From the NCBI GenBank assembly GCA_976226885.1, contig OZ320316.1:26040001-26104000 (forward strand): 64,000 bases of DNA. Reading direction: 5' to 3'. The stretch is from Iphione sp. A-MEVVRFRX5. Lineage: Eukaryota. The first letter of the stretch is position 1. Each line of letters begins with the position of its first letter. The notes beneath the pieces are model-generated. The model did not search any database. It worked only from the letters and a program-made list of their open reading frames with translations, and had not been told where the DNA came from. The translations under genes were made by a program, and so were the position numbers. Positions 25,024 to 61,895 of the stretch are shown here, one piece after another.

Positions 25024-27081
25024 CATTGGTCGATCATCCACTCCCGATTGAAGAGTCTGTCTGTCGTAGAATCCTTCGACAAGTTGGGCTTTCAGTCGTG
25101 TTAACTCCTGTCCCGACTTTTCTTCCATTGAAGAAAGAAGACCGAGACCTGCCGACCTTTCATCTGGTGTTCCGACAAGCTGCACCCGACGGGACTGCTG
25201 CAGTGTCGTGCTGTCAGGGTTCCCCGTGTTTTTCAGGGAGTATTTTTCGCACATCTGTTCGTGTCCTTGCACAGTTGTCAAAGAAGCATTGTGGCTTGGT
25301 TTTGCCCCAAGCTCGACACTCTGATCTTTCTTTATTGGTTCACCGATTTGGTCCAAACATTCGTCAGGAACTTTTGTTAACTCAAGTTTCACATCATCGT
25401 TGTCCTCACCAACATGTTCATCCCTTGAGCTTTGAGTCATGTTATCTTCTTGCTGTAAATTGGAATCATGTATTTGGACCTGCACATTTTCATGCTGCGC
25501 ATACTCGTTAGAAGAAACGGTGTTCGTCTGCTCCCACTCGGCTAGACGATGTGTCGGTTTGCAACTATCATCTTCTTTAAAATTCTGTCGTAGGGGATGC
25601 GATTCTAATTGTATAATCGTCTCTGACTCCTCTCTTTCCATGTCAAGATGTGGGATTTTGGAATCCTCTCTATGAACTTCGTCTGCAGTGCCGTGAATTC
25701 CTTGTAGAGTACGTGCAGGAAATTGGGACGATCGGTAATCATCGCTGACCCACTGTGAAACTCTCAAGGCCTGGCTTTCCCTTACCGTTATGATAGCTGC
25801 CTCGTTCTCATCCTCTTCGTCGAATTTACCTAATTGCTGTTGAGGCCGAATGCGACTTGTCACTTCAAATTTGATCACAAAAAGACCTGTATTCAGGTCA
25901 TAAATCTTCTTGTCTTCTTCGATTTCCAGGGGCGACATTATGTATGAATTTTTGTCTTTCGTTTCAGAATGGTTTGCATCAGCTGGCAACGCACTGTGAA
26001 ACGAATGCTTTTGTGACAAAGGAACGTATGCCTCTATCCCATTTTTATCATCTTCACGATTATCTGCGGAAGGTCCTTGCCTATTTTCATTTTCTTGTTC
26101 GAAACCTTTAGTGCTATGGCTGATCGGTAAGCTTATTTCCTCGCTGGCATTTTCATTTCCAAGTTTCACAAAGACTCTTTCCAACGATGTCTCTAATTGG
26201 AGAGGTATTATTTGGTCTGTAATTCGCTTATCTAGGGAGGAACCTATATCCTCTTCCATTTCTGGAGTTTCCATACGTCTGCAACTAGCATGTGTAGGTG
26301 TCTCATGGAGGGCGTTTATATCTTTTACTTCGACCGTTCTTTGTGTTTTCCTCTTCAGTCTCTGTCCTTCACTCAGAGTATTGTCACAGATTTCAATTTC
26401 AGCATGACAATACGTAGCGGACGTGACCAGGTTTTCTGTTACAGAGTCGTTATCTATTGCTGTCTGCAGTGACATAATATGGTGCGGAGGGTCCTTTTGA
26501 TGGTTGGGTGAGCTTTCGTCTGACCTATGAAAGTCAAAGACATCCACGTGTTTTACCTCTGAGTAAGGCCGTTCGCTTGACACTATTTGAGACTCAAAAC
26601 CTAAGGCTCTCCTCTCTTCTTTTTCCTTTATAGACATTGTTATGTCTTTGAGGGGGTCCACAGAATCCTCTGGTAGGAGAATCACCTTTACCTCTGAAAC
26701 CGGTTTTGCCGCGTACAGAGTAAACTCGGTATGCTCTCTACTCTCTTGTGTTGCGGGTGCGATGTGCTCCAGCACCGCATAGGTTTGTTCCCCAATAGTG
26801 CAGTTGGGCGTGACTTGCAACCTATTCGCATCGCATTGCTCAGAATTCAGCAAACGTCCAGCATGACCTTCTATTTGTCCTGATAGCCACGTTTCCTTCG
26901 AAATTTCGATACACTCCTGGGTATTTGGAGCAGGATTCAAAGACTTGGGATAATATTGACCCGGGTCTAGTTCAGCAATGCCGTCGCCTTCAACGGTGGT
27001 AATGGATTTTTCATTCTTTGTGTGGAGATGCATATATGTTCTAGTTCCATGACAGGGCGCAACTGCATCTTTTCTTACAGT
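25024..27081 (-). CDS. SYNE1: Large 2058-bp nesprin-like exon, acidic low-complexity region (686 codons)
   Basis: Lies within ORF 24985-27162. Acceptor ttgtttcag|ACT, donor ATG|gtatgt, phase 0/0; E/D/S/T/Q-rich. Confidence 0.82.
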
Positions 27082-27195: not shown

Positions 27196-30100
27196 CTCTT
27201 GGGAATTCTCATCGTTGGAATCTTGTAGGGTATTGGTCACTTCAACAGTGACAATCGTGTCTTCCAAAGTGGAGATTATGTCATCCTTTAACAGAGCTTC
27301 CTTTTTATCAGCAGTATGTGTCTTCACTGTTTCGTACGCCTTGCGCATGGACTCCTGGGAAAAGGTAATAAATCGATTCCACAGATTTACAAAAGATTGG
27401 GTGTCTCGAGACCTTCCATTTTAAAAGATTATTTTCACAATCTTCCTGACACCATTGCAGTGAACAAATTTACTTGGCATGATGCTAATTTCAACAGAAA
27501 TACCTCTTGCTTATCTTCATTGTAAGAATCTTCTTTGGTATTAGTAAGTTCAAAATTGCTGATTGTGTCTCCCAATGTGGATGTTTCATCATCCTCTAAC
27601 AGAATGACCTTTGTGTCAGTAGGTTGTGTTTTTATGGTTTTGTGCATAGACACCTAAGAAAATGAAACAAGTACAGGAGAACCCCTCTTTACGGACGCCT
27701 GGACACAGCAGACGCCCCTTACAACGGACACTCTGGCATCAGTCCCATACAAAATTCCTCTATATCTAGTTTATTACAGCCCGGACACAGTGGACACTCA
27801 GTGACAGTGGACACCCCGCCTCTGGACACTTCTTTTCTAGTCCCAAATGCTCATTTTCCAAGGTTTACAGTGAACACCCAACCCTGAAGGAAATGCTACC
27901 GCCTCTGCTTTGATGGCGTCTCACCTCTGGGAGAGGTGCGAACCTGTCCTTCTCACCCCGGAGGAAATGCTACTTCCTCTGCTTTGATGGCGTTAACCTG
28001 TCCTTCTAACCCTGGAGGAACCTTTCTTTGATGGTGTCTCACCACCGTGGTTATTCCTCTACCACAGCCAACCTCCACTCTACCACAGCCAACCTTCACT
28101 CTACCATTACCAACCTCCACTCTACCACCTTGAACATACCCTCTACCACAGCAGATCTTTCCTCTACCACTACCAACCTCCACTCTACCACCTGGAAGAT
28201 TCCCTCTACAACTGCTCGGCAACAGCAGACACACCCGACAATGGACGCTTTGGCTTCAGTCCCATCAATGTCCATTGTGGCGGGGTTTTACTGTATATAC
28301 ACCAATAATTTTAGAGTACCACAAAATGTCAAGTATCTCAAAACCTTCAATTTTAATATATTTGCATCACAGTCTTCATGATATTACTGTCCCTTACTTT
28401 TGAGTTGGAGTATACATTATATTTGACATTGTGCTAATTTCAACAGAAATACCTCTTGCTTATCCTCATCGTAAGAATCTTCTTTGGTATCAGCCACTTC
28501 AAAATTGCTGATTGTGTCTTCCAATGTGGATGTTACATCATCCTCTAACAGAGGGACCCTTGTGTCAGCAGGTTGTGTTTTTATAGTTTCAAAAGCCTTG
28601 TGCACAGACACCTAAGAAGATGAAATAAATAGACACCATTAAACAGAGTACTACAAAAGGTCAAATGTCTCAAAATCTTAGATTTTAAAAGAATATTTTC
28701 ATCACAATTTGCATGATATTACTGTCCATTATTTCTGAATTGCAGTACACATATATATTTGGTATGATGCTAGTTTCAATAGAAATACCTCTTGATAATC
28801 CTTGTTGATTGAATCCTGATGTGTATTCGTCAATTCAACATTAATGTTTGTGTCATCCAATGTAGACATGTCATCCGTTAACAGAGCTACTCTTTTATCA
28901 GCAGTAGCTCTTTTCATGGTTTCAAAAACCTCCATGGAATCTTGCTGGCTATCAGTCACTTCACAATTGATGATTATGTCTTTTGGTATGGACCTTACAC
29001 CATCCTCTAACAGAGTAACACTTCTGTCAGTAGCATGTGTCTTTACTGTTTCTAAAGCCTTGTATACACACTCCTAAGAAAAGGAAATATGTGGATAGAT
29101 AAATGATTCATGAGCAGTACAAAAGGTTGAATGTCTTATTACCTTTCATTTTTAAAAGAACATTTTCATCAAAATCTTAATGAAATCATTGCAACCAATG
29201 TACGCATTACAATACACATATATATTTGACATGATGTTGATTTCAGTACAAATACCTCCTGGTAGTCCTTACTGGGACCTTCTTGGGTACTAGTCACTTC
29301 AAAATTGTCTATTGTGTCATCCAATGTAGACATTATGTCATCCTTTAACAGAGCCAAAATGAACATTCTGTCACAGTCTTCATAATATCATTACACCTAA
29401 CTCATGAATTACAGTATGGATATATATTTTGCATAACGTTGATTTAAACAGACATACCTCTTGGAAATCATTACTGGGATCTTCTTGGGAACTAGTCCTT
29501 CCAAAACTGTCCATTGTGTCATTCAATGTAGACTTTATATCATCCGTGAACAGGTCTACCCTTTTATTAACAGTAGCTCTTTCCATGGTTTCGAAAACCT
29601 CCATAGAATCTTGCTGGATATTAGTCACTTTACAATTGATGATTTTGTCTTCTGATATAGACCTGACACCATCCTCCAATAGAGCAACATTTGTGTCAGT
29701 AGCATGTGTCTCATCCTTTTGAAAAGCCTGGTGCACAGACTCCTATGAAAATGAAATATATCAGTTTAACCATGATTCTAGAGTAATACAAAAGGTTAAG
29801 TGTCTCAATATCTTTCATCCTTAAATGAATATCTCTGTCACAGTCTTCATGAAATCATGACACCTAACTTATGAATTACAGTTCATGTATACATTTGACA
29901 CATTGTTGGTTTAAGCAGAAATACCTCTTGGTTCTCCTTGTTGGGATCTTGTTTGAAACTAGTCACTTCAATATTGTCAGTTGTGTCATCCAATGTAGAC
30001 ATTATGTCATCTGTTAACAGGGCTACCCTTTCATCAGCAGTAGCTCTTTCCATGGTTTCGAAAACCTCCATAGAATCTTGCTGGATATTAGTCACTTCAC

Positions 30101-33100
30101 AATTGATGATTGTGTCTTCTGATAAGGACCTGACACCATCCTCCAATAGAGCAACACTTGTGTCAGTAGCATCTGCCTCCACCTTTTCGAAAGCCTTCTG
30201 CACAGACTCCAATGAAAATGAAATATGTCAGTACAACCATGATTCTAGAGTATTACAAAAGGTTAAGTGCCTCAATATCATTCATCCCTAAATAAATAAT
30301 TCTGTCACAGTCTTCAGAATATCATTACACCTAACTTGTCAATTACAGTACATGTATACATTTTACATGAGGTTGATTTTAGCAGAAATACCTCTTGGTT
30401 CTCCTTGTATGGCTCTTGTTTGGTACTAGTCACTTCAAAATTGTCTGTTGTGTCATCCAATGTAGACAGTATGTCATCTGTGAACAGGGCTACCCTTCTA
30501 TTAGCAGTGGCTCTTTTCATGGTTTCAAAAACCTCCATAGAATCTTGCTGGATATTAGTCACTTCACAATTGATGATTGTGTCTTCTGGTATAGACCTGA
30601 CACCATCCTCCAATGAAGCAACACTTATGTCAGTAGCATGTGTCTCCACCTTTCCCATAGCCTGGTGCACAGACTCCTGTGAAAATGAAATATATCAGTA
30701 TAACCATGATTCTACAGTACTACAAAAGGTTCAGTGTCTCAAAATCTTTAACCAATAAATGAATATCTCTGTCATAGTCTTCATAATATCATTACACCTA
30801 ACTCATGAATTACAGTACATGTTTACATGTACATTTGACATGATGTTGATTTTAGCATAAATACCTCTTGGTTACCCTTGTTGGGATCTTGTTTGGTACT
30901 AGTCACTTCAAAATTGTCTGTTGTGTCATCCAATGTAGACATTATGTCATCTGTGAACAGGGCTACCCTTCTATTAGCAGTAGCTCTATTCATGGTTTCA
31001 AAAACCTCCATAGAATCTTGCTGGATATTAGTCACTTTACAATTGATGATTTTGTCTTCTAATATAGACCTGACACCATCCTCCAATAGAGCAACATTTG
31101 TGTCAGTAGCATGTGTCTCATCCTTTTGAAAAGCCTGGTGCACAGACCCCTGTGAAAATGAAATATATCAGTATAACCATGATTCTACAGTACTACAAAG
31201 GTTCAGTGTCTCAAAATCTTTAACCAATAAATGAATATCTCTGTCATAGTCTTCATAATATCATTACACCTAACTCATGAATTACAGTACATGTTTACAT
31301 GTACATTTGACATGATGTTGATTTTAGCATAAATACCTCTTGGTTATCCTTGTTGGGATCTTGTTTGGTACTAGTCACTTCAAAATTGTCTGTTGTGTCA
31401 TCCAATGTAGACATTATGTCATCTGTGAACAGGGCTACCCTTCTATTAGCAGTAGCTCTTTCCATGGTTTCAAAAACCTCCATAGAATCTTGCTGGATAT
31501 TAGTCACTTCACAATTGATGACTGTATCTTCTGGTATGGACCTGACACCATCCTCCAATAGAGCAACATTTGTGTCAGCAGCATGTGTCTCGGTCTCTTC
31601 CAAATCCTCCTGCACAGACTCCTATAAAAATGAAATATTTATTAGTATAACAATGATTTTCGTGTACTATAAAACGTTGAATGTCTTAATGTTTTTCATC
31701 TTGAAATGAATATCTCTTTCACAGTCTTGATATCATTGTACCTAACTTATGAATTACAGTATATATACATTTTGCATAATATTAATTTCAATCTAAATAC
31801 CACTTGGTAATCCTCTTTTTTATCTTGTTGGGTATTAGCCAGTTCAAAATTTACAATAGTATCTTCCAGTGTGGACGTTACATGGGAAAAGCTTTGTCAA
31901 TATGTACGATGATCCTATGAAAATAAATCAATCGAAATTACAATTATAATTACATCATCCATTAAGAGTGTGTCCTTTGTATCAGTGGAATGGGTTTTCA
32001 TAGTTTCCAAGGCCTTCACAGACTCCTGTGAAAATGAAATAAATGGGTTCACCTATGATTTTAGAGTACTACAAAAGATTGAGTGTCTCAGTATCTTTCA
32101 TTGTTAAAAGAATATTTTTATCACAGTGTTCATCATATCATGCACCTAACTTAAAAGTTATGGTGTACATATATATTTTAAATTATGCTAATTTTGAATA
32201 GAAATACTATTTCATAATTCTCATTATTTGAATCATCTTGAGTACTAGTCACTTCAATATTCTTGATTTTGTCTTTCACTGTGGACATTAAGTCATCCTT
32301 TATCAGAGCTACCTTTGTATCAACAGCATCTGTTTTCATGGTTTCTAAAGCCTCAATGGAATCTTGTTGAGTATTAGTCATTTCACAATTGATGAACATG
32401 TCTTCGGGTATGGACCTGACACCATCCTCTGGCACAGCAACACTTGTGTCAGTAGCATATGACTTCACCATTTCCAAAGCCTTGTTCACAGACTCCTATG
32501 AAAATGAAGCAAATGAACTGGTCAGGTGGCTCGATACCTTTCATTTGGAAACAAATACTTTCATTACAGTCTTCATGATATCATTCCACTCAACCTTTAT
32601 GAATTACAGTACAGTGGAACCCCTATTTACGACCATCATTGGGTCCCACCAAAAGAGGTCTTACTAGTGAGTTTGGTTGCAAATTGAACACAATTCCTGC
32701 AGAATTGCTAAGTATGGTTGCAGGAGTGGTCTCAAATAGGGTTTCCACTGTATACATATTTATTTAACATAATCTCAGAAGAAATACCTCTTGGTAATCC
32801 TTATTATTTGGATCTTGTTGGGTGTTAGTCACTTCACAATTGATGATTGTGTCTTCTGGTATGGACCTTACACTATCCATTAACAGAGCAACATTTGTTT
32901 TAGCAGCATTTGTCTCCACTGTTTCCAAAGCCTGGTGCACAGACTCCTATGAAAAGGAAATATGTGGGCACAAGAATGATTCCAGGACAGTACAAAAGGT
33001 GAATTTTATCAATGCCTTTTGTTGTTAGATGAATATTTTTATCACAATCTTCAGGATATCATTGCACCCATCTTTATAATTTAGAGTATACATGTATATT

Positions 33101-34430
33101 TGACATGATGTTAATTTCAATAAAAATAAATCTTGGTAATCCTAATTGTTGGGACCTTGTTGGATATCAGTCACTTTAAAATTGACAATAGTATCTCGCA
33201 ATGTCAATGTTACATTATTCTCTAACAGAGTGACCCTTGTATCAGCACAAATGATTTCCATGATTTCCAAACCCTTGTGCACAGACATCTGAGAATATGA
33301 AATAAATAGGCATACCAATGATTCCAGAGTGCTACAAAGGTTAAGTGTCTGAATACCTTCATTGTCAAATAATAGTTCCATCACATTCTTCATATTATTA
33401 GTGCAGCTAACTTATGGAGTAAGTATAAATATATATTTGGCATATTGTTAATTTCAATATAAATACCTCTTGGTCATCCGTGTTGTTTGAATCTTGATGA
33501 GTATCAGTTACTTCAGCATTGATGTTTGTATCTTCCAATGTGGACATCATGTCATCCTTTAACACAGCTACCCTTTTATTAGCAGTAGCTCCTTTCATGG
33601 TTTTAAAAACTTTGATGGAATCTTGCTGGATATTAGTCACTTCACAATTGATGACTCTGTTCTCTGGTATGGATGTTACACCATTTTCTGACAGGACAAC
33701 ATTTGTTTTAGCAGCATTTGTCTCCACTGTTTCCAAAGCCTGGTGCACAGACTCCTATGAAAAGGAAATATGTGGGCACAAGAATGATTCCAGAACCCTA
33801 CAAAAGGTGAATAATATAAATGCCTTTTGTTTTTAAATGAATATTTTCATTACAATCTTCATGATATCAATGTACCTAACCTTTATAATTTAGAGTATAT
33901 TTATATATTTAACATGATGTTAATTTCAGCAGAAATACCTCTTGATAGGCTTCATTGTTGGGATCTTGTTGGATATTAGTCACTTCACAATTGATTGTTG
34001 TGTCTTCTGATATGGTCCTCACATCATCCTCAAACAGAAAATTACTTGTGTCAGCAGCATTTGTCTGCACTCTTTCCAAAGTCATGTGCACAGACTCCTA
34101 AGAAAAATAGATATGCAAGTATGCCAGTGATTTCAGAGTACTACAAACATAATATGTTTCATTTATAAAAGAACATTTTCATCACAGTTTTATCACAGTC
34201 TCCTTGATATGATGGCATCTAACTTACAAAATACAGAATGCATACATTTGACATGATGTTATTTTGAATAGAATTACCTCTTGGTAATCCTTGTTGTTTG
34301 AATCTTGTTGGGTACTAGTCATCTCAAAATTGTTGATTGTGTCTTCAATTGTGGATTCATCCTTTAACAGATCTATCTTTGTGTTAGCAGGATCTATTTT
34401 TATGATTTCCAAAGCTGTGTGCACAGACAC
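27196..34430 (-). CDS. SYNE1: 13 apparently intact phase-0/0 repeat exons: 34278-34430, 33939-34097, 33467-33754, 32788-32946, 32208-32495, 31337-31621, 30865-31149, 30392-30676, 29458-29742, 28789-29073, 28453-28611, 27504-27653, 27196-27354
   Basis: Each is bounded by AG/GT, has a length divisible by 3 (150-159 or 285-288 nt) and is open. Peptide type ESVHKALET..THA.DT.VALLEDGVRSIPEDTIINCEVTNIQQD...NKDYQE. Confidence 0.75.
27674..28293. mobile_element. TA-flanked pogo/Tigger-like non-autonomous element with internal ~21-bp tandem repeats (CTCTACCAC-based, ~28057-28215)
   Basis: TA|CAGGAGAACCCC...GGGGTTTTACTG|TA; GGACAC subterminal motifs; interrupts the array periodicity. Confidence 0.7.
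32612..32750. mobile_element. Tigger/pogo-type MITE inserted in a repeat-unit intron
   Basis: TA|CAGTGGAACCCCTATTT...AAATAGGGTTTCCACTG|TA; related to 49721-49896. Confidence 0.85.
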
Positions 34431-36732
34431 CTAGACAAATGAAATCAATAGGTGCACTAGTGATTCCAGAATAATACAAAACGTCAAGTGCCTCAATTCT
34501 TTTCATTTGTAAAAGAATATTTTCATCATAATCTTCACAATATCATTTCAGCCAACTTACAAATTACAGTATGCATATATTTGACATGGTGCTAGTTTTA
34601 ATAGAAATATCTCTTGGTAATCCTTGTTGGTTGAACATTGTTGGGTACTCTTTACTTCAAAATTGCTGATTGTGTCTTCCATTGTGGAAATTATATCATC
34701 CTTGAACAGAGGTACCTTTGTATCAGGAGCATCTGTTTTCTTGGTTTCTAAAGCCTCAATGGAATCTTGTTGAGTATTAGTCACTTCACAATTGATCATG
34801 GTTTCTTCTGGTATAGCCCTTCCACAATCCTCTAAGAGAGCAGCACTTGTGTTAGCAGCATGTTTCTTCTCCATTTCCAAAGCCTTGTGCACAGACTCCT
34901 ATGAAAATGAAATATATAAGTATAACAAGGATTCAAGAATACTACTAAATGTTGAGTGTTTTTATACTTTTCATTTTCATATGAATATTTTCATCACAGT
35001 CTTCATGATATAATTGCATCCAACCTATGAGAAAAGAATGTTTATCTAATCACAATGTAAACACTACAGCCTCAGTCATATTGATCTCAATATTTAAAGG
35101 GAACAATCGTTTTTCAGAGAAATAAAACCATGCCTCTCAGATGACATTATACTGCCAGTTTTTAAATATTACTATGTGCACATAGACCTTATAATGCAAA
35201 ATTATGAGCAGAGACTTGTCCAGATATGGATGCACACGTTCAATATGGATAATCTTTGCCTGTGTTACTAAACCTTAGCAGGGTTGTTTGAAAACTATGT
35301 AATGCATTTCAACTTACACAAGATTGGCAGGAATTGGATATTGAGAAAATTCGTTTACAGAATATTTGGTATAGGAACACAACTCTACCTGAAACTCTTA
35401 ATCCATTTTAAGTGAACTACTACTAATCCTTATAAGTGACGAGGAATATAAATCAATCTCAGGGGAATAACATAATTGATAATGTACAATATGGGAAAAT
35501 ACAGCTGTCAAATAAATTAGGCCATTTGAGAGTCAAACAGTGTCCTGTAGTAAATATGCAGTACTCCTAAAAAAATCCCAAAGTTATAAACCAAAGTTCA
35601 ATTAATATCTTAAGAGGCAAATGTTGTTGGCAGTGCTATGTGAATATGCTTGTCAAAGATATTTACACAAATACATCATAGACTGTTGATATTACTTGAA
35701 AGTGATCAGTTTCTTCTGAATGCATTTTCTTTCAAAGTCCTAAAGCATCCTTTACAAAGATATAATACTTTAAGAATAATATAAGTATACTTGTCCGGTG
35801 TCAATGCCTATTGATCAATACACTTTAAAAAATAATAATTACATTAATTAAGAATATAAGGTTTTATGGTTTATGTCATAGTTAATTATATAAAAGCGAA
35901 CCACCCACGATCTTGTAGAGAGATGGAGAGTTTCCTTTTTTATTAAAAAATATATGATCTTTGAAAATCCAAGTGTGTTCTTGAATGATCAATCTCAGAT
36001 GTTATTTCTATTGTATAAGTTTTCTTTGTTTTCCTATTTTCTTTCTCATTGGTAATTGCATGGCTTATATTCTGATATAGATGTAACTTTGGGAGTAAAC
36101 TATACTTATTCGCTTTCGAAGAGGACCATTGGCAGCCTTATGATTGTAACAATTATGTGAATATCAACAATACCCATAGTTGTGTGAGAAATACACGTCT
36201 CTTGGTAGACCGTAGATTACTCTACTTATACACAAGTATCAGGTGCCAGCATTTATCGTTCTCTTTATACTAAAGAAAACCCCAAGATTTATTCTGACGA
36301 TACACTTGTGGGACTTAACAACTGGAATCTTAGAGGCAACATTAAAGGAATTCTTGGTGATCGATTATCCAAGGGGGTTGACCCTCCCTGTTTCAATGTT
36401 GTCAAGCAGGACGCACAGGCGTTTGGTCATGCCTTGTAACCGTTGTCAGGATACAATCCCCTACTTCTTTTTTTTGGCATTATGTAGCGCACTTTTCATT
36501 CACATATTACGTTTCGTTGCATTTTGAAAATTTTACCTAATTGGCTTCCCACTTCCATTCAAGCTCTGTGACAACAATACCACCATATCCAGTGGAGACC
36601 CGGTTAAAAACCAGCAGATCATAGGGAAGACAAAATCCCGGGGAGAGACCAAGATGTCTCAGACCAAATGATTTGTTTCTCTCTATGTAGATTGTGTCTA
36701 ATGAAGAAAAAATGTGCGAGAGACCACATTAC

Positions 36733-36885
36733 CTCCACCGTAGAGAGAAGACTTTGATATCTGGAGGCAGTATTGGTAATGAAGGACATCACATCTTCAT
36801 TGCCCGAGAAATCTACAACAGCATGGGCCCTGTCAAGGGCACTGTCCACTCTGTCGCCTTGGAATTTGAGGTCTTCATGGATTTC
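36733..36885 (-). CDS. SYNE1: Nesprin-like spectrin-rod exon
   Basis: Phase 0/0. EIHEDLKFQGDRVDSALDRAHAVV...ASRYQSLLSTVE. Confidence 0.88.
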
Positions 36886-37290
36886 CTGAAGCAGAAAGAC
36901 AAAAATCATCATTTGCATTACTTTTTAACTATGGTACTTTGTATTCTTAAATCAACATCATAACAACAATGTTACCTATTTTGAAGGGAACCATGACTTT
37001 AAGTGAGATACAGGCCTCATAGGGTGTTTACTTGATGTATTACTTCTGTGTTATATCCTCAGCTGCACCACAACTATAATACAGAAGTAATATTTGGTGT
37101 ACAGCGCTCTACTCGTGCTGTATCTATCACGTATGATAATAATTACAGCCGGAAGAATATAATTATTCTCATCTCCCCTGCAGTTAACGTACGTCGACTT
37201 GTATAAAAACAATACCTTTTTTCACCTCTCCGCACATAACGCTCTAATGCAGGCCATAAATTATCTGTAAGAATAAAATAAACGACTTGC

Positions 37291-37617
37291 CTGCAGTCTT
37301 TGTAATTGTGACCAATTTTCCTGAAAAGCAGCACCTTGTTTCACGCACATGTTCATTTCGGATTCTGTTTTCGTCAGCCATGTCTCCACAATTCGTTTGC
37401 AATCGAGGTAGGCAGACCACTTTGCGTTCACAGTATTACATTCTTCCTGCACCTGGCTTATGTCTCTGTGTAGATTGTCCCAGACCGCGCCTGCTGTTTC
37501 GAGCTGGCGTTTGATTCGTTCTCTCCCCTCCACTGATGAACTTTTATAAAGTCTTTCACCAGCTGTCATAGTTTTGTTCAGGTTTCCTTTGCCAGATTCA
37601 CAGCGATCCAAAATTCT
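37291..37617 (-). CDS. SYNE1: Nesprin-like spectrin-rod exon (GC donor)
   Basis: ttttcatag|AGA...CAG|gcaagt. GERLYKSSSVEGRERIKRQLETAGAVWDNL...WSAY...ETWL. Confidence 0.88.
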
Positions 37618-38874
37618 CTATGAAAATGATGAATCAGGAAATACGTGCAAGAATGAGTAAATACGAATTTGTATGTTGTACTACAGAGAGGAAATGATAA
37701 ACTTATGTTGAATCTTTATACATATCAATATTCATAAAGATGTATATTTTTAGCAGAACCCTATGCTACAAAGGTGCACAACAAAATCATCAATGTAGGG
37801 TAGCCAATTAGATGAGAAGTCAGGGAAGGGCATAACATCATTGCCATGTCCAATTATCTATATATAGTCTCGTTTAAGTAAAATGCTCAAAGTATTTCAT
37901 TCATTTTAATGCCTTTTTTGAATTCCTGGCTCAGCGTACTAGTCTTTTATCTTAGTGAGATCTGACTTCTCACTGCATGATTTTAACCCACTTATCTAAT
38001 TCAAAGTGCAAGTTCGGTGCTATTCTTGACTTTCAATTAAATCATATCAGAATTCTTTATTGCCATAGTCCAATATAACCAAACAATAATGTTCTAGAAA
38101 CATGACAAACCAAACTTCAATGTCAAAGGAAGTTTCCCTCTAATGTGACCCGAATGTTATAAACTAACATTTTCAGAATGTTGCCTGAACATTATATTCT
38201 TTTACCTAAATGTTTTGATATGAAGTTTATACAACATCACCTGAATGTGTTTGTAACTGAACCACACCGCAATGATGTCTGAATGTTATATTTCAGTGTT
38301 ACTTGAAATAGTAATTTAATGTTTATACATTGCCTGAATATTCTTTAATAAGGAAACCAAACCAGAATTTCCTTGATGGCTGATCCAAACGTAGATTATT
38401 GAGTTTACCAGGAACAAAGGAGTAAGAAACCGTACTATCAGAATTGGTGTCAAACAGGTTGGAACTGGTATGCCCTAGCCATGCCAAGTGTTCCGAATAC
38501 TTACCAAGCACTCTAAACGTGATATTGATGACGATTCATGAATATAAATTTGGCAAGCACGTCTAAGGTGATTTACTCTATGCTCTGAAACGGCCTGCGG
38601 CACGAGTGAACACCAAACTCGACAGTAATCCATAATTTATGGCTTAAGTAGATAGCGAACGGAACTTAAACAGTTCGTTGTAGTGTCTGAGCAATGGCAC
38701 AACGATTTTGTGCTTGCATTCCCTATGCGTATGCATGGCTAGACTACAGAGCAGATTCTCAGCTTGTAAAGCTGACATCGAGAACGTCATCGAGCAGGAC
38801 CAGACGGCAAACCAGTAAAACACCAGCGAACACACTTGCCAAAACTATTGAATCTCCCTGAGCTCACTACTGAC

Positions 38875-39039
38875 CTGGATGTTGAATCTGTTGTTCTGAA
38901 TATGGTCCGGTTGTTGGAATGAAATTCTTATTTTGTCGATGCACTGTTTTGTGTCGGACATCCATCTTGTCAACTTGTTATATTGTATTTTATATTCCTC
39001 GTGTTCACGCACAAACCGTGTCCATTCAAAGACAAGATC
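38875..39039 (-). CDS. SYNE1: Nesprin-like spectrin-rod exon
   Basis: ttttacag|GAT...CAG|gtcagt. DLVFEWTRFVREHEEYKIQYNKLTRWMSDT. Confidence 0.88.
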
Positions 39040-39684
39040 CTGTAAAACAAAAACGTATAGAAGTAACGGGTCTTTACCGATATTACTTTGTAGCGGTTTA
39101 GTTCGGGTGGGAGTTTTAATGAGTCTTCAGAGAGTAAATTGCTATATCCCTCACAATGCCGTTACGGCGATCTGACCTGTTCATAACTCGTCTTTGTAGT
39201 GTTAGTTCAAAATTACTGTTGTAGCAGTTAAGTAGAGTTAAGAATCCAACTTTGTAACAATTATCAGATATGTGTAGATACTCTGCTGGCTATCTCTTGC
39301 TATCTCTCTTGCTTTCAACACCATAGAGTGTACCCCGGAAGTGCAATGGACGTCAAAATTGCACATACGGTAGCTAGACTTGAAAAGTACCTCTGTTATA
39401 AGCAATTACTAGGTATAACAAGGAACAAAAGGAGGGTTATGTGCATGCATAGAGAGAGGAAGCTTGGAGCTTGGATATTTCATCAGGATCCAATGAGGAC
39501 CCAAAGAAATGGACATGTACTTCATGTCCAATTTAGGATCATTACAAAGTTGATGATGTTGCCGATCATGCATGGAGACAAAGGCTCTCCGAACAAAAAA
39601 CAATTGTGGAGGGAAAGTTTTACAACAAGAAGGCTATCAGCATTACCTCCGACATTCAAATACTTATCTGACGATGTGTCGTAC

Positions 39685-39837
39685 CTCCACTGTTTTCTTC
39701 ATACACAAGTATTTAGTTTGAAGTGTTTGTGGATGCCGTCTTCTGTGTTGCGCAAATACCCTCATTGGTACTCCCTTTGCTTCAAGCAGAATATCATGTA
39801 GGTTTGTGTGATGGTTTTGAACATCTTGAAGTATATC
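39685..39837 (-). CDS. SYNE1: Nesprin-like spectrin-rod exon
   Basis: ctatag|GAT...GAG|gtacga. DILQDVQNHHTNLHDILLEAKG. Confidence 0.82.
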
Positions 39838-40165
39838 CTATAGATATAACGAAAAGATCACAATGTGACACACATAGATTAATAGCATGTACATGTTTTC
39901 ATCTAATGTCTATATCCCTTCACAAAGCAGGCGTCTTCAATGAATCATTCAATCCAATACGATACACTTGCATCGATTTGATGTTATAACAGTCTAGTTA
40001 AAGCATACAGAATTATACGAAGTTTCTTTTGTCGAAGTTTTACATAATATCCCTGTTACATCAAGATGAGTAGAGTGAAAGGTGAATAGAAACATACCGA
40101 TATGAATGAATGCAAAATCTTCCATAAATCACACACCATATCCAAACATATCCTCATTGATACTA

Positions 40166-40864
40166 CAGTGCGCTCCCTGCCTGCGGACACGTCTCCAATG
40201 CGGACGCGTCTCCAATGCGGACGATTTGACGCAGAACGAAATCTTTTCCCATACATAACCATTATGACCAGACGTCTCCAATCAGGACAGCTAATTTTAC
40301 AGAGCGTCTCCATGTGGACACCTCCCAGACCCCTCTCAGAAGTCATTTTCAAAGGTTGTTGTGCAAATTTGGGGCCTCCCAGACCCCCTGACACCCTCAA
40401 AGAGTAGGATTTCACACCTATGTATGTGTTGTCGCGCGACTTTGGTGCCCCTGAGAGGCCCAGAAGTCAGTACTTTTTCATCAATGTGTCAATGGCGACC
40501 TCTCTGATGTCTCTCACACCCTGGAGGGACTGTATCTCACACCTCTATTAGTCATCAAATTCAGCATTTTTTGGACTTTAAGTCATCAAATTCAGCACTT
40601 TTTGGACTTTTAGTCATCAAATTCAGCACTTTTTGGACTTCAAGTCATCAAATTCAGCACTTTTTGGACGTTTCAGAGAGTATACACCTGTTACTAGAGA
40701 TGCCTTGTATTTGGTATGTACATATCAGTTGTAGAGAGAGAGGGAGAAAGGGATTTCATTTTCTAGTTAGACCCCCACTGTACCCCGTCTCCAATGCGGA
40801 CGCCTCTCAAATGCGGACGGTTTCGGCCAGAACAGAGGGTGTCCGGAATGGAGAGAGTGTACTG
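40166..40864 (+). mobile_element. Non-autonomous derivative of the Tigger at 4993-7209 (about 700 bp)
   Basis: TA-flanked. Shares 5' CGTCTCCAATGCGGACG...GACGATTTGACGCAGAACGAA and 3' GTAGAGAGAGAGGGAGAAAGGG...TTTTCTAGTTAGACCCCC blocks; no transposase. Four ~30-bp tandem repeats at 40549-40669. Confidence 0.9.
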
Positions 40865-41402
40865 TATATGTAAAGGCAAAGATGTAAAACTCGACTGAAT
40901 GAGATCCTAGGATCCCAAAGATGTTGTAACAGAACTGACCATACGATTCAAGATGCATATGTCGCAACCTATTAGAAGTATCAGAATCTATATGCATTTT
41001 ACAATGGCAAGAACTCCTGTGGGAAAGACGTGTGAGTTGGTCATGGTGCGATTTGGTCGTGGCACGGACCTCCAAGAATCCATTGGAAAGTATCTCCACT
41101 TAAGGGGTTAAGGATTTTTTCAGCATGTGGATGATGGGCAATGTAGTCAGTGTTTACTTTAAGCAATGATTTGTAGACGAAGGCAAGGTCGCTTACTCGC
41201 AATGCTTACCTTAAGCAAGCAACTGAGAATTCAATAGACCTAAATATTTCATAAATGAAGACAGATCTGTTGAGATAATACATCTATGTTGTTACAGCTC
41301 TATTACTGTAAGCTCCCCCTGATTTTCAAGAACTATTCTTATGGCATACCGAATGTGTACACACAAATATTAAGCATTAATTCCTGTTCAAATTCCGTTT
41401 AC

Positions 41403-41601
41403 CTCTAGTTCCTTTAACTGGGAGACTTTACTTGTCCCGTCGTATTGAAGTCGTGACCCCTTTTCAATAGCAGCGTTTGTGCGGTTTATCCAGCAGTCAA
41501 ATTCGCTTAATTTCATATCCAGAGCGGTCGCTCGTTCCATACTATGTTGCATGTTAACTCTGAAACGAATTTTGACATCTTTGTACACCACAGTCAGAGA
41601 A
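41403..41601 (-). CDS. SYNE1: Nesprin-like spectrin-rod exon
   Basis: Phase 2/0, fits exon 45160-45476. SLTVVYKDVK...LSEFDCWINRT. Confidence 0.85.
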
Positions 41602-42779
41602 CTGACACGAACGCAGTAAACATCATAGTATTTATTTTACCGCGGCACATATAAGAGTGTTATATTTAGACAGAGGGAGGTTTTGGTGTGTGGAAAGAGA
41701 TAATCATTACAAACACATTATCACAGATATAGCCCTACTTCCCTTCAGGTAGAGTAGGAACACAGTTCTGAAGTGTCGGCGCATGCACCATATACAGAGG
41801 CCGGGTTTGTTTACTTCCTGCACCTTCAAGTGTTACTACCAGTGCAAGGTGCTTGTCAGATGAATTCAATCAAGTACTACCTTGCAGTCTGGACTTTTTT
41901 TTATTCCACATGAACCACAAAAGCACACACTGATAAGTAAAGCTTGACATCATCACATACATGGCTTCATGAATAAACCATAAAGTAATCCCATTATAAG
42001 TTAGATAATAATGCTCGAATTTTCATGTAACAAAACACCGATCAAAAGGAAATGATGTCAGGATTAACATTATTCACAAAGCTATCATGTGGAAACCTTT
42101 GGAACCATATATCGTGAATGGTAGTGAATTGCAAGTGCATGGTAGCTAAGCTTACCAACATGTGCTAAATTGGTGAAATGTAGATTACATTACATTAAGT
42201 TATGATGTGCATTATATCGTTGATTAAGCACATGTTTAGGACATTCGGGGCATGATGACTAGGAGGCAGAATATCATGACTAGAATGCAGAACATCGCAA
42301 CCACCAGATATAATGACTATAGTTTAGCTACTGTACCAGTAGTCACTTGATATTGTCCATGCAGTACTGTCCCCTGGTATCTTATTCAGTTACTACCATA
42401 CTATGCTCGGCTCCCTCAGTCGGCTGGCCTTTGAATGCTTGATGAGAGTTCGGGTGGAAATTTCTGGACTATGCTGGACACACTGAACCCTGATGGAATT
42501 GGCAAACCAGGGCAACATAGACGATGCCTGCAGAACCAGCCGACTCAGACGTCTAAGCAAACAACTCAACACGCCAATTATCGATGTTCCAGCAGGAATC
42601 TGACCGGCAGACAAGGCCAATCTTATGATCATGATTTATGAAGCGACCTCCTTGACTAACCTTGTGTGATATTTCCCTATCAATTGATCACATTCAGATG
42701 TTTCATTTGGCCAACTCCCCGCTGATATTGCCTCCATACTTAACAGAAAATTTACCTTATTGTTAGACATTTCTGACTG

Positions 42780-43410
42780 CCAAATCATTTGGAATCCCGA
42801 GTACTATTGCCCTTCCAGTTAAATCTGCCTAACTGCCATAAGCTACTAGATGGCTTAATCCCTGACGAGGCACATGTCTTGGAGTTTCTCACCTATTGCT
42901 TCCAGCCGGGAATTGCTGCTGATAGCATCCTCATCCCCACCGATTAACTCCACCCTCTCTTCCAACACTGATGTCCCACATGTAGAGAAGTGCACAGAAC
43001 ATGGACAGAACTTGTCTCTAATGTAATTACAGGCCCATTCACACATGATCCATTCACCATCTACTAAACCATAAGCCCAACCATGACAAGGAGCAAGAAA
43101 CAGTCGTCAGATAGACGCATTATGGTCGACCTGAGTCGCAGCGGAGTTAATCATTTAATCCCCGAGAACAATAACTACACCATGCGCACCACGATTAACG
43201 TCCCGACACCCCAACCCCTTGCCGACCTCATTATGACTTCCCCCTCCCCTTCTATACCTCACGGCCATCGATCTGAGGAGGGTCTATCGTTATTTCCCGA
43301 GCGACTCCCTCGATTGGCTCTCGTTCAAATTCGCCCACGCACGCTATACTGACCTAGAACTCCCATTTCTTGCGCTCGTTTCTCCTCTGTGCTTCTTCAA
43401 ACCCTTCCCA
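42780..43410 (+). pseudogene. Degenerate DIRS-order RT fragment
   Basis: ITGPF..DPF...SPTMTRSKKQSSDRRIMVDLSRSGVNHLIP aligns by eye with LVGPFTSPPF...SPIMSRPKNNSAERRIIVDLSHSGINSYIP of ORF 54954-56672. Confidence 0.8.
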
Positions 43411-44099
43411 GATATTTGTGCCCTCTCCTACCTGCAGCCGGCCTATATACACACTCCAAGACGCTAACCAAGCAGTTTAATAGGCATTCACCTGCATCAT
43501 GAAAAATTCACTCCCTCAACCTCGATCTAATTGCGGATATGGTGGGTTAGGTTCCAAACGGGTAGAGGGGTAGGTCTTTGAAAGCCAGATCTGACGTCGA
43601 TGACATGGAAGATGATGACGGAGAGGGGCAGGTGGGTGACGACGAGATGACGGAGATAATATGATAGATGATAAAGAGGGAAAGTTTAGGACACAATTTA
43701 AGGATGGCGATTGATATCGTCAGTAACTATATCCTTAAACAACTGATCCCTAACCCTTTGCCCGACATTTAAAAAAAAAGTTACAAAGCAATGTTTTGCA
43801 TGTTTTTCTCGCACTGTGTCGTGACTTTACATGAAATGATCGGTGGAATCTCTATGATGACATCGCAAAACTAAAATAAATATTGCACTGTAGCATGTTG
43901 GTTGAAACTCAAGGGATAATTAAGTGACTATAAATGACAGCAGTTACCGGTGGTAGTACACAGAGCTCTCAGTACAATACAAGTTGTGCTTGGCACTTTA
44001 CAGAAGCCAGAGGGTCTGAAGGTGAGTGCTGCAGACTGGCTTGATTGCATTGTCATTATGTAGACAAAGTTTCGAAGTCTGCAGGTGAGTGCCTATATA

Positions 44100-44275
44100 C
44101 AGTGGTCATTAACTGACACTTTTGGTTCCATTATATCTCATTGGATATATGAGTATTGTCAGTTGTGGGAGCAACACTGATTTTTCCACTGATTTTTCAT
44201 ATTTGGTCCCCCCCTGAGTGTGTCAGTCCAGCAGTATATGTCGGTTATCATGTCATTAGATACGGGGGACCACTG
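44100..44275. mobile_element. Tigger/pogo-type MITE
   Basis: TA|CAGTGGTC...GACCACTG|TA. Confidence 0.7.
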
Positions 44276-45159
44276 TATTAGTTCAGTGTGCTATAATGTT
44301 TGTAGTTCACTTATATTATTGTAGACTGTATTTAGCTTTTCTTTGACTGTATGATTTGGTCCCTAAGCTATGATTTCACTTAACCTAAAACCAGGTTCAA
44401 TCATGGTATATAGGTGAAACGTTCTGCAAAGTCTTCTGGACTGAATAGATATTGGTTTGTATATATTTTGTGGTCACTCACATTACGTATTGACATGAAA
44501 AACTCTGTACATCCATGATGGAGATTGTCAATGAAATGTCAATTCAATTCATTTCAATATGTTGGCCTATTGTTATATGTTTGTCATCATATTAAATATG
44601 ACGGGGGGCGGGGAGACGGTGTTCTGAGGCAAGGTCATTAACTGGTTGTTAAGGATTTCCTCATCAGATATGTAGATGAAGACCTGAATAGAACTGGATT
44701 GCCAAAGGTCTTTTTTCAAGGTTTTTGTTTCAAGGGAGTTTGGCATTGCCTGTATCAGTTATATTCCGGAATCCTTTTGAACCATATTATAAATATTAAC
44801 CACAGGTATATGTAAATTATCCATAGTTTACATACTAATGAGGGTAAAATTAAACATGAATGTTTCTTGAGATCCAAAATCTGACAAATACAGTGACATG
44901 TGTATTACTTCACAAAGTAAGTTAACAAATAGATATACTTTGGTTAGTGGACAACGAATTAGTGATAAGAAACATACTAAAAGGTTTTGAAGAAGAATAC
45001 GAATGGATTGCAGACACGTTATCCTAAATATAATGAAGTCTCATACCGCCTTAAAAGTGTATTTGTGGTTTACTTTATATAAACAGAAAGATAACCCATT
45101 CGGTGCACAATACAGTTGAAAATTGCTTGTTGTTGGTGCTATAAAGAACACATACTTAC

Positions 45160-45476
45160 TCAGCATGTATTACGTCTTCGAAGGATGATTTCCATTCATA
45201 CAGTGCCTTTGCTTTCGATTCTGTTGCAAGATTTGATTCTCCCATTGCGTCTAAAATATTCAATCGCTCCAATACCCGGCCGAGCCGATCGTTTCCGTCG
45301 TCAAAGGAACGTCGAAGTTCAGCCATTGCTGACAGCTTTGATGGGGCAGTGTTCATGTCATCGCTGAAACCTGAATATGTCTCGAACCTCTCCCTGACAG
45401 AGCCAAGCCAGATGAGATAGTTTCTGACATGTTCCTCTGTGTCTTCTTTTATTGCCAGAAACGTGCTGTCTTGCGC
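45160..45476 (-). CDS. SYNE1: Nesprin-like spectrin-rod exon
   Basis: ttcttttag|GCG...GA|gtaagt, phase 0/2. EEHVRNYLIWLGSVRERF. Confidence 0.85.
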
Positions 45477-46255
45477 CTAAAAGAAAGCAGCGAAGGTATA
45501 CGTTTGATCAGATATGAACTACAGCTGGTATGACGAAACGTCATATCAGCAAGCTGGCACAATTCTGAATACTACAAACGTGGATCGATCCTATATTCAA
45601 AATATAAACATTTGTGGCCCAATCATTAGCCCAAAGCAGTAAACGCCACAGTATCGAACATTAAGTAGAAGCTGGCGTACAAAGCGCTGGTTCGTGGGCT
45701 TGGTCCCAATTTACTTTCTCTGACTGCAACAGTGTTTCTTAAGATCTAATCAAACTGTAATGTTGCCACATTAATGTCATCACACCCCAAAAAGCATTGT
45801 CACAACAGTAGGTGTAACATGAGCAAACTATTAACTGTGCAAGAACGTTTTGACTTTATCGATGAAAAACGGGTGTGGCGCTAAGGAACGGGCCTCTGCC
45901 ACATCATTGCACACTCAGTTATTTTCAACTACGCTGTTGATAGAGTTCCCGGCTAGAGTTTCAGTGTACCCACTCTGCCACAGGAGAAACGTTATCTTGA
46001 TCAATTACCGTCATTTACCTGAAGTACAAATATATACATTTTGCAAGATTTATCTCTGTGTTAAACCCTGGTATGATCACATAAAGTCTCCGACGTGATT
46101 ATTCCTTGCCCTTGTATTCATCAAAGTGCTCGGGATGATGCGTTGACCTAGTGACGAGGGCCGACATGTACTACGGATGTGATTTGTTAGTTAGGTGCCT
46201 ACATTTGTCTTACTTCCTTTCGTATTTGAGTTCCTGGGCGAATTGATATTATATA

Positions 46256-46433
46256 CAGTGGAACATCTCTACTGCGGACAGCAAAGAGACTGACCAAAAA
46301 GTGTCCATAAAGAGGGATGTCCTTTATATCAGGGTTATTTAAACATGCTCATATAGATTGGGTTCTGTTTCCATCCTGTCCATAATATGAGGTGTCATTT
46401 ATAGAGGGTGTCCTTAGTAGAGCGGTTCCACTC
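46256..46433. mobile_element. Tigger/pogo-type MITE
   Basis: TA|CAGTGGAACATCTCTACT...AGTAGAGCGGTTCCACTC|TA. Confidence 0.78.
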
Positions 46434-46896
46434 TAACTCTAATCTTATCGTTTTGTCACGCAGGCATCGGCCATGGCCCACAGAGATGACTGTAGGCCAT
46501 TTAATTGCAAAGACACTATACAAACCTTATAGGTTCCTCGTGGTCTAACGACGTCCCAGTCCTGTAGTACACACTCTTAATCTGGGGAAGCCACTTGCAG
46601 AGAAGGGGAAGATTACTGTGGTTTTAACTTTGATAGGTCCGTATGGTAAAGTGGATTTCTATTTTACTTTGGTGGAAAACTTACAGTGGAGAATCGTGTA
46701 AGGACCAGATCATAGCCGAGACCAAAACGAGATAGAGGCCACGATGCTTCATAATGTGATTAAACCCTGAGAGGGACCAACATTGTCCTGTCCCAACAAT
46801 GGTCACCTACATGGATCCATCATGTATATGCTGATCAAACCTTAGCTCTGATTTCATGCATGAGTTACCAGTCGTGACGATATGAGGCAGAGTTAC

Positions 46897-47037
46897 CTTT
46901 TGATTTATCCTATACTGATCTTGAACACTGGTGGCGTACATTTCTTCTTCGATTGCAAAAGGACGATGCTTGGCATCAGGGGTCGAAATGATTTTTCGTG
47001 ATCTGTCTCGGCATACGGCGGTTAGCTCGAACAGTTC
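46897..47037 (-). CDS. SYNE1: Nesprin-like exon
   Basis: ccgttttag|GAA...AAG|gtaact; 47 codons, open. Confidence 0.75.
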
Positions 47038-47293
47038 CTAAAACGGTAACGTAAAGATTGAAAGGTCACCCCCTAAAGGATACAGTCGTGACAGACCTTA
47101 TGTTAAACCTACGTCCTTCAAGCGATTTGACCTCTTGACATTATTGTTTTTTGTACACTCTTAAGGTGCATAAGTGCATATATACGTGAATGATACCTGC
47201 TTTGAATACGAGTACATTTATCAATTTAACGTCTAGTGTCGTGAAGTACAATTGTGATAAACATATGTAACCTACTCTAACATAATGTCATAC

Positions 47294-47443
47294 CTGGAGA
47301 CGTGTGTCTAGACCTTGCATTATTTCATCTACTTGGTCGACATCAAAATGACATTGCCCGTCTAACTTCACTGATATGCTCTGAAGAAGTTCGCCCTTAC
47401 TCTCCAGAAAAGGTCGATAATATTCCACTTCCTTGGAGAACTC
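47294..47443 (-). CDS. SYNE1: Nesprin-like spectrin-rod exon
   Basis: ttacttag|GAG...CAG|gtatga. EFSKEVEYYRPFLESKGELLQS. Confidence 0.85.
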
Positions 47444-47702
47444 CTAAGTAAATATGAATATTTTATAATACGGCGGTAAGGTTATCAATAACATATTCTA
47501 TGATAATAGCGAGAGCTTGGGATTTTAGGTTGAAGTATTCTGTTGTATGTCTGAATAAAAGAAGCCATATGATGCGCCTTAACTGACAGCAAATGGCCGA
47601 ATTCAAACCGTACAATGCATTGAATGGACATTTGGCGTAGAATGTTGTGTAGTGTTGAATTGATTGTGGGAATGATAAACTGATTATTTATAAACAACGT
47701 AC

Positions 47703-61864: not shown

Positions 61865-61895
61865 ATTTTGGAATCGGTATTCCAATATCTACAAC

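What the first reader, a model, noticed from the sequence alone, without database searches (positions are those of the whole stretch)
27196..34898. Nesprin with a tunable linker built from 18 tandemly duplicated symmetric exons
Seen: the whole exon+intron unit has been duplicated. Each exon holds one (50-53 codons) or two (95-96 codons) copies of an acidic ~43-aa module plus a ..NKDYQE tail. All are phase 0/0, so any subset keeps frame. The 13 intact exons would add ~990 aa between the N-terminal rod and the C-terminal spectrin repeats. Known: giant nesprins such as ANC-1 and Msp300 have lineage-specific repeat regions, and symmetric exon arrays allow combinatorial splicing, as in titin PEVK. 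Inference: a lineage-specific, splice-adjustable spring or spacer in a nucleus-cytoskeleton linker. I do not recognise this repeat as a described domain.
Basis: partly seen in the sequence, partly recalled or inferred. Interest (0 to 1): 0.8.

Follow-up and report, generated by a model that had tools for sequence, protein, structure and literature searches.

The report
Acidic tandem-exon array in nesprin-like gene
A nesprin-like cytoskeletal linker gene holds 18 tandem copies of an exon-plus-intron unit, 13 still spliceable in frame, which encode an acidic, probably floppy repeat seen in no other protein searched; whether cells use or vary them is untested.

Summary
On the minus strand, 27196-34898 carries 18 homologous exon+intron units. 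Thirteen keep an AG acceptor, an open frame and a GT donor (980 codons). One more (U12) has lost its AG but keeps an in-frame AG 3 nt downstream. Four are dead. Every unit and both flanking exons are phase 0/0, so any subset stays in frame.

The unit occurs nowhere else in the 1.18-Gb genome. The 43-49-aa module has no credible relative in Pfam, PDB, the ESM Atlas or 1.84 billion protein representatives. However, those libraries do not seem to hold this species or close kin.

Coding constraint is real but weak:
- exon indels are all multiples of 3;
- exons are more alike than introns;
- dN/dS is 0.4-0.55 between old units and about 1 between the youngest;
- 9 of 13 old units are intact, against 3-22% expected neutrally.

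The host gene has a CH domain and Spectrin_SYNE1-type exons, so it is nesprin-like. No KASH domain was found within 108 kb downstream.

The "splice-tunable spring" reading is untested, because no RNA run was listed. This is a new variant of a known kind (titin PEVK, obscurin, ANC-1 repeats).

The parts
36733..36885 (-). Constitutive-looking upstream exon. 153 nt, phase 0/0, acceptor ttcag, donor GAG|GTAATG. Helical, spectrin-like sequence.
   Evidence: Read directly from the sequence. Open frame.
34611..34898 (-). U1, a double-module unit (96 codons, frame open). Donor mutated GT>AT, so probably dead.
34278..34430 (-). U2, a single-module exon (51 codons), AG/GT intact.
33939..34097 (-). U3, a single-module exon (53 codons), intact.
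33467..33754 (-). U4, a double-module exon (96 codons), intact.
33130..33288 (-). U5, a dead unit. In-frame TAG at 33145-33143 and donor G>T.
32788..32946 (-). U6, a single-module exon (53 codons), intact.
32208..32495 (-). U7, a double-module exon (96 codons), intact. Donor ATA|GTATTT.
31801..32025 (-). U8, a disrupted unit. An insertion brings stops, while AG and GT are kept (225 nt). It could act as a poison exon.
29458..31621 (-). Young cluster U9-U13: five 285-nt double exons with a 467-472-bp period, 85-95% alike. U9 31621-31337, U10 31149-30865, U11 30676-30392 and U13 29742-29458 are intact. U12 30209-29925 has TG for AG but keeps an in-frame AG 3 nt downstream.
29256..29366 (-). U14, a 5'-truncated unit with no usable in-frame acceptor.
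28789..29073 (-). U15, a double-module exon (95 codons), intact.
28453..28611 (-). U16, a single-module exon (53 codons), intact.
27504..27653 (-). U17, a single-module exon (50 codons), intact.
27196..27354 (-). U18, a single-module exon (53 codons), intact. A 114-nt intron leads to the next exon.
25024..27081 (-). Large downstream exon of 2058 nt (686 codons), phase 0/0, donor ATG|GTATGT. Acidic, with no Pfam family and no relatives found. It lies on the disordered side of the charge-hydropathy plot.
60179..60451 (-). Exon encoding the CH2 part of an actin-binding domain.
   Evidence: Pfam CH 6.3e-9. Best PDB matches are the second CH domains of plectin and beta-spectrin.
37264..51912 (-). 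Upstream rod exons. Pfam Spectrin_SYNE1 matches at 51598-51912 (weak), 49865-50245, 48162-48545 and 37264-37617.

Best explanation
The array is a block of real, symmetric (phase 0/0) coding exons in a nesprin-like gene (CH domain plus SYNE1-type spectrin repeats). It grew, and is still turning over, by unequal crossing-over of whole exon+intron units. Each exon carries one or two copies of a 43-49-aa acidic module rich in Thr, Asp and Glu. The 13 spliceable exons, together with the adjoining 686-codon acidic exon, would insert up to about 1,670 residues of non-spectrin, net-negative, probably disordered chain into the rod.

Shown here: the anatomy, the confinement to one locus, the frame and splice-site retention, and the lack of detectable relatives of the module.

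Inferred: the exons are spliced into mRNA, and the segment works as a flexible charged spacer whose length depends on how many units are present in the genome or included in the transcript.

Any subset of units stays in frame. U8 keeps its splice sites but carries stops, which fits units being skippable. No transcript evidence could be obtained.
For: - 18 homologous units on the gene's strand. Thirteen have AG, an open frame and GT, and all lengths are multiples of 3.
- The flanking exons are phase 0/0.
- The three indel events among the nine double exons are each 3 nt long. In the adjoining 175 nt of intron, 5 of 9 events are not multiples of 3.
- The double-to-single exon length differences are 126-135 nt, again multiples of 3.
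- Old units are 75-82% alike in their exons but mostly about 60-76% alike in their introns.
- dN/dS is 0.42-0.55 between old intact double exons, Fisher p 0.006-0.04 per pair.
- In a crude neutral simulation an old unit stays intact in 3-22% of runs. Nine of 13 old units are intact, P about 2e-4 at p=0.2.
- The unit is absent elsewhere in the genome at DNA and protein level.
- Introns between adjacent intact units are short, 149-190 nt, with pyrimidine-rich acceptors.
- Composition: D+E 21.9%, K+R 8.6%, net charge -131 over 980 aa. Mean hydropathy is 0.417, below the 0.461 folding boundary.
- AlphaFold2 gives mean pLDDT 45.
- Self-alignment shows nested duplications of 467-bp and about 1,144-bp units at 72-95% identity.
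Against: - There is no RNA evidence at all, because no RNA run was listed.
- dN/dS is about 1.0-1.5 among the youngest units U9-U13. Third codon positions are barely more variable than first and second: 42 against 37 and 30 of 94.
- Four or five of the 18 units have decayed.
- All but two intact-unit donors read GTATTT, without G at +5, so they are weak by the usual consensus.
- No relative of the module or of the large exon was found. The searched libraries did not return the window's own proteins either, so conservation in other species is unknown.
- The neutral model is crude. Gene conversion between units could also keep frames open.
Confidence: 0.6

Rival explanations
1. The array is an intronic relic. 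One ancestral exon was amplified as a tandem repeat inside an intron, and transcripts now splice from 36733 straight to 27081. The open frames survive through youth, gene conversion and the stop-poor composition of acidic codons.
For: dN/dS is about 1 among U9-U13. Four or five units are dead. Donors are weak, GTATTT. No transcript support could be obtained. No homologue is known.
Against: Old units at 18-30% divergence still keep frame and both splice sites far more often than the neutral simulation allows, 9 of 13 against 3-22%. Exon indels are all in frame, unlike intron indels. Exons are more conserved than introns, and dN/dS is 0.4-0.55 between old units.
Confidence: 0.25
2. The array is a mutually exclusive exon cluster of the Dscam type. 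Only one unit, or very few, enters each transcript, so it provides alternative versions of one segment and not a long repeat.
For: Tandemly duplicated homologous exons are the classic source of mutually exclusive splicing (PMC9013439, PMC6071210).
Against: Exon lengths differ widely, 150-288 nt. No conserved docking or selector pairing was found: RNAalifold predicts 0 pairs on the 17 aligned upstream introns, and the best inverted-repeat candidate pairs at only 0-12 of 12 positions across units. Introns of 149-190 nt are long enough for neighbouring units to be joined. All combinations stay in frame, so there is no NMD safeguard. The sequence looks disordered, so there is no structural reason for one-only choice.
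Confidence: 0.07
3. All spliceable units are included constitutively. The result is a fixed acidic repeat region of about 980 aa, with no regulated variation. Length changes only over evolutionary time, through copy number.
For: The intact units have near-identical splice signals and short uniform introns. Nothing in the sequence marks any unit as regulated.
Against: U8 keeps AG and GT but carries in-frame stops, so it must be skipped for a full-length protein. Uniformly weak donors are typical of skippable exons; this rests on general knowledge and was not tested here.
Confidence: 0.25

Closest known systems
ANC-1 (C. elegans nesprin-1/2 orthologue) tandem repeats
   Same: A species- or lineage-restricted tandem repeat region inside the rod of a protein of the CH...KASH linker family. 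The repeats are required for nuclear anchorage (PMC8139857).
   Different: ANC-1 has six 903-residue repeats, nearly 100% identical at the nucleotide level and predicted to form spectrin-like helical bundles. Here the module is 43-49 aa, with one or two per exon and 70-95% identity. It is acidic, with a low-confidence fold, and no KASH end was located.
Titin PEVK exon array
   Same: Many short, tandemly duplicated, frame-symmetric exons encode a low-complexity elastic or entropic segment (PEVK as an entropic spring: PMC7274174 abstract). Differential inclusion of PEVK exons is from my own knowledge.
   Different: The composition differs: Thr, Asp, Glu, Val and Asn with 1.7% Pro, against the Pro/Glu/Val/Lys of PEVK. 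The gene family differs. Differential splicing is documented for titin and untested here.
Obscurin and other giant-protein tandem exon duplications
   Same: [quoted passage not shown]
   Different: Obscurin units encode folded Ig domains that are conserved across vertebrates. This module has no detectable relatives and no confident fold.
Dscam-type mutually exclusive exon clusters
   Same: A tandem array of homologous exons within one gene.
   Different: There is no docking or selector complementarity, exon lengths are unequal, and every combination stays in frame.

Membership tests
Nesprin / SYNE1-2 / ANC-1 / MSP300 (giant KASH proteins) | N-terminal actin-binding domain made of two CH domains | tested here: inconclusive
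   A CH2-type exon lies at 60179-60451 (Pfam CH 6.3e-9; PDB matches to second CH domains). CH1 was not found. It is expected upstream of an LTR element that fills 60.86 kb of the window to about 6.1 kb of L014.
Nesprin / SYNE1-2 / ANC-1 / MSP300 (giant KASH proteins) | Rod of nesprin-type spectrin repeats | tested here: met
   Pfam Spectrin_SYNE1 matches exons 49865-50245 (4.8e-12), 48162-48545 (7.5e-12) and 37264-37617 (8.4e-9), with a weak hit at 51598-51912. In a whole-genome scan, the only Spectrin_SYNE1 matches over the Pfam cut-off (two) lie in this gene, which also holds a third just under it.
Nesprin / SYNE1-2 / ANC-1 / MSP300 (giant KASH proteins) | C-terminal KASH domain (transmembrane helix plus a luminal tail ending in PPPX) | tested here: inconclusive
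   The whole-genome Pfam KASH scan gives one clear hit, on another contig (C1:19610502). It sits in an unrelated intronless 2008-aa ORF. Nothing credible was found on this contig or in the 108 kb downstream. The 3' end of the gene was not defined, and a KASH domain split by an intron could be missed.
Splice-tunable symmetric exon array (titin PEVK type) | Tandem homologous exons, all of the same phase and a multiple of 3 in length | tested here: met
   flanking exons
Splice-tunable symmetric exon array (titin PEVK type) | Differential inclusion of units in transcripts | not testable with these tools
   No RNA run was listed for this sequence, so read laying could not be used.
Mutually exclusive exon cluster with competing RNA structures | A docking site complementary to a selector sequence next to each variable exon | tested here: not met
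   Inverted-repeat scan, RNAalifold with 0 pairs, and candidate helix pairing of 0-12 of 12 positions across units.

The most novel reading that the evidence does not exclude
The nesprin-like protein carries a combinatorially spliced acidic spacer. Thirteen or fourteen independent, frame-neutral cassette exons, built from an orphan 43-49-aa module, let cells set the length and negative charge of a disordered segment in a nucleus- or organelle-to-cytoskeleton linker. Ongoing unequal crossing-over would make the copy number vary between individuals.
Probability: 0.25. Interest if true: 0.65.

Novelty: new variant of a known kind. Interest (0 to 1): 0.42.

Why it matters
Giant linker proteins set how nuclei and organelles are tethered and how the cytoplasm behaves mechanically. 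In C. elegans the lineage-specific repeats of ANC-1 matter more for anchorage than its CH or KASH domains (PMC8139857).

If this array is expressed, it would be a second, independent case of a nesprin-type rod extended by a young repeat that is not a spectrin repeat. It would be built from frame-neutral exons, so its length could be changed both by splicing and by recombination. That would make it a natural system for asking how linker length and charge affect tethering.

If it is not expressed, it is an ordinary decaying intronic exon amplification.

Tried and rejected
- RNA evidence: the look-up of sequencing runs listed no RNA holder.
- Relatives of the module: the word search, ESM Atlas, Pfam and PDB gave nothing. 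The profile search of 1.84 billion representatives gave one hit, P0001, at E 3.5e-5. It is a bacterial leucine-rich-repeat protein that matches on 'ITIPDSVTSIG'-type repeats, and I reject it as spurious.
- Relatives of the large exon and of a Spectrin_SYNE1 exon: none were found within the tool's length limits. These blanks do not show absence, because not even the window's own proteins came back.
- Dispersed-repeat idea: rejected. All DNA and protein matches in the genome lie inside the array.
- Docking/selector or 3'-splice-site hairpin: there is an AT-rich complementarity between an intron segment and the acceptor tract. It is not conserved and has no consensus structure.
- KASH search downstream: one PP-ended hydrophobic ORF and one tblastn match at 26013098-26013163. 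The latter has no transmembrane helix and no stop after the match, and I reject both.
- Plus-strand ORFs across the array: they are mirror ORFs of stop-poor acidic codons. They run across exon-intron borders, lack splice signals, and lie antisense to a supported gene.
- Fold search: not run, because the model's pLDDT of 45 would give meaningless matches.
- Joined exon model: not built.
- Organism: it could not be identified with these tools.
Full report
**What is there**

The window is G000:C10:26040001-26104000 of a 1.18-Gb animal genome. Tandem Repeats Finder reports a 467-bp period with 5.3 copies at 29357-31851 (87% matches, score 3515).

Translating the minus strand shows a run of open pieces that all carry the same acidic sequence. 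A profile built from 15 of them (A1) finds 19 pieces, which make 18 units. All lie on the minus strand between 27181 and 34898, and none lies elsewhere in the window. Upstream introns of 17 units were aligned (U14 was left out); 16 align well and U17 only partly.

**Exon anatomy**

I read the borders directly. Thirteen units have a pyrimidine-rich tract ending in AG, an open frame and a GT donor: U2, U3, U4, U6, U7, U9, U10, U11, U13, U15, U16, U17 and U18. Their lengths are 150, 153, 159, 285 or 288 nt, which gives 980 codons.

- U12 has TG where the others have AG. Most units carry a tandem acceptor (YAG|GAG), so U12 still has an in-frame AG 3 nt downstream.
- U1 lost its donor (G>A).
- U5 has a TAG stop and a G>T donor.
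- U8 has an insertion with stops but keeps AG and GT.
- U14 lacks its 5' half.

A double exon is two copies of one module: its halves are 41% identical over 39 aa, E 9e-8. Single exons are either the first module plus the tail, or the head plus the second module.

The upstream exon 36885-36733 (153 nt) and the large downstream exon 27081-25024 (2058 nt) are also phase 0/0. Any subset of units, including none, therefore keeps the frame. Introns between adjacent intact units are 149-190 nt.

**How it arose**

Self-alignment shows nested duplications:
- a young 464-472-bp ladder (U9-U13, 85-95% identity);
- an older three-exon super-unit of about 1,144 bp (U1-U3 against U4-U6, 72.6%);
- a 1,051-bp match between the U3-U5 and U14-U16 regions (75.7%).

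Among the young units, stretches of 100% identity in introns sit next to exons that are 92% identical. This mosaic points to repeated unequal exchange or gene conversion. Together with the four dead units, it looks like birth-and-death turnover.

**Is it coding?**

No RNA run was listed, so I used intrinsic tests.

1. The three indel events among the nine double exons are each 3 nt long. The 175 nt of intron upstream carry nine events, and five of those are not multiples of 3. The double-to-single length differences are also multiples of 3.
2. Old units are more alike in exons (75-82%) than in flanking intron (mostly about 60-76%).
3. dN/dS is 0.42-0.55 between the old intact double exons (U4, U15 and the young cluster), with Fisher p of 0.006-0.04 per pair. 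It is about 1.0-1.5 within the young cluster and 0.65-1.1 for U1 and U7. Third codon positions are only slightly more variable than the others.
4. I ran a crude neutral simulation with 10-16% substitutions per lineage and indels at the intron rate. It leaves an old double exon fully intact in 3-11% of runs, and a single exon in 9-22%. In fact 9 of the 13 older units are intact, P about 2e-4 at p=0.2.

Together these tests show purifying selection on frame and splice sites, but only weak selection on the residues. That pattern is what a disordered spacer would show. Gene conversion could contribute, and the simulation is rough.

**What the module is**

The 980 residues are 21.9% Asp+Glu, 8.6% Lys+Arg (net charge -131), 19.6% Thr+Ser and 1.7% Pro. 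Mean hydropathy is 0.417, below the charge-hydropathy boundary of 0.461. The adjoining 686-codon exon behaves the same way (0.403 against 0.441). AlphaFold2 with the 15-exon alignment gives mean pLDDT 45, with two low-confidence helices.

No Pfam family, PDB chain, ESM Atlas cluster or word-search hit matches the module. The profile search of 1.84 billion representatives returned one protein at E 3.5e-5. It is a bacterial leucine-rich-repeat protein, and I take the match to be spurious.

These blanks have limited weight. The libraries did not return the window's own products, and searches with the large exon and with a spectrin exon were also blank. So this species and its close kin appear to be missing from them.

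Within its own genome the unit is confined to this locus at both DNA and protein level.

**The host gene**

On the same strand, exon 60179-60451 is a CH2-type calponin-homology exon. Exons 51598-51912, 49865-50245 and 48162-48545 together cover the Pfam Spectrin_SYNE1 model once, and 37264-37617 matches it again. In a whole-genome scan, the only Spectrin_SYNE1 matches over the Pfam cut-off (two) lie in this gene, which also holds a third just under it. The N-terminal architecture is therefore nesprin-like.

I could not find the defining KASH end. The genome's only clear KASH match is on contig C1, in an unrelated intronless 2008-aa ORF rich in Gly, Ser and Asp. Nothing credible lies in the 108 kb downstream, where an F-box/LRR-like gene and a dynein-like gene begin.

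Downstream of the large exon, open pieces at 24361-18426 look helical. One has a weak Spectrin hit at E 0.037, so the "C-terminal spectrin repeats" are plausible but not shown. I call the gene nesprin-like and leave membership open.

**Rivals**

- A Dscam-like mutually exclusive cluster is unlikely. Exon lengths differ, all combinations are in frame, and the only inverted-repeat candidate is not conserved, with no consensus structure.
- An intronic relic remains possible, at about 0.25. It is favoured by the neutral-looking young copies, the weak GTATTT donors and the lack of transcripts.
- Constitutive inclusion and variable inclusion cannot be separated here. U8 keeps its splice signals and carries stops, so full-length protein requires at least one unit to be skipped.

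**Comparison with known systems**

The pattern is familiar from giant cytoskeletal proteins:
- titin's PEVK exons;
- obscurin, where exons and intervening introns were duplicated together (PMC9013439);
- the six 903-residue repeats of the nesprin orthologue ANC-1, which are required for nuclear anchorage (PMC8139857).

What is new here is the module itself, which is an orphan, acidic and not spectrin-like, and its place in a nesprin-type rod.

**Limits**

The organism was not identified. An earlier agent's note on this genome calls it an invertebrate, and I did not verify that.

**Verdict**

This is a new variant of a known kind. Interest is 0.42, and a single long-read cDNA experiment would move that figure sharply either way.

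Noticed in passing
window 28057-28209: A 21/63-bp minisatellite (consensus CTCTACCACAGCCAACCTCCA, about 6 copies) sits in the unusually long 799-nt gap between units U16 and U17.
   Followed up: no
window 53814-57582, minus strand: A DIRS-like retroelement lies in an intron of the gene. Its ORFs carry a reverse transcriptase (RVT_1 1.6e-12) and a weak tyrosine-recombinase match (Phage_integrase 4e-4).
   Followed up: partly
window 60856-64000, continuing to about 6130 of L014 (G000:C10:26104001-26114000): An LTR-type retroelement lies on the minus strand, with an 1151-aa pol-like ORF and a gag-like ORF. It sits in the intron upstream of the CH2 exon and separates that exon from the expected CH1 exons.
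   Followed up: partly
window 5422-6975, plus strand: An intact-looking 518-aa Tigger/pogo-type transposase ORF (CENP-B_N, HTH_Tnp_Tc5, DDE_1 2e-38).
   Followed up: partly
L021 (G000:C1:19610001-19620000), 502-6525, minus strand: An intronless 2008-aa ORF rich in Gly, Ser, Asp, Thr and Glu ends in a canonical KASH domain (...GGPPPT; Pfam KASH 2.5e-14). It is the only clear KASH match in the genome and is unrelated to the window's gene.
   Followed up: partly
window 27354-34898, unit acceptors: Most units have a tandem NAGNAG-type acceptor (YAG|GAG). This could add or drop one Glu codon at each exon start.
   Followed up: no
G000:C10:76954449-77063532, minus strand: A second gene on the same contig has a CH exon, many Spectrin exons and one weak Spectrin_SYNE1 hit. 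It could be another spectrin-superfamily linker.
   Followed up: no
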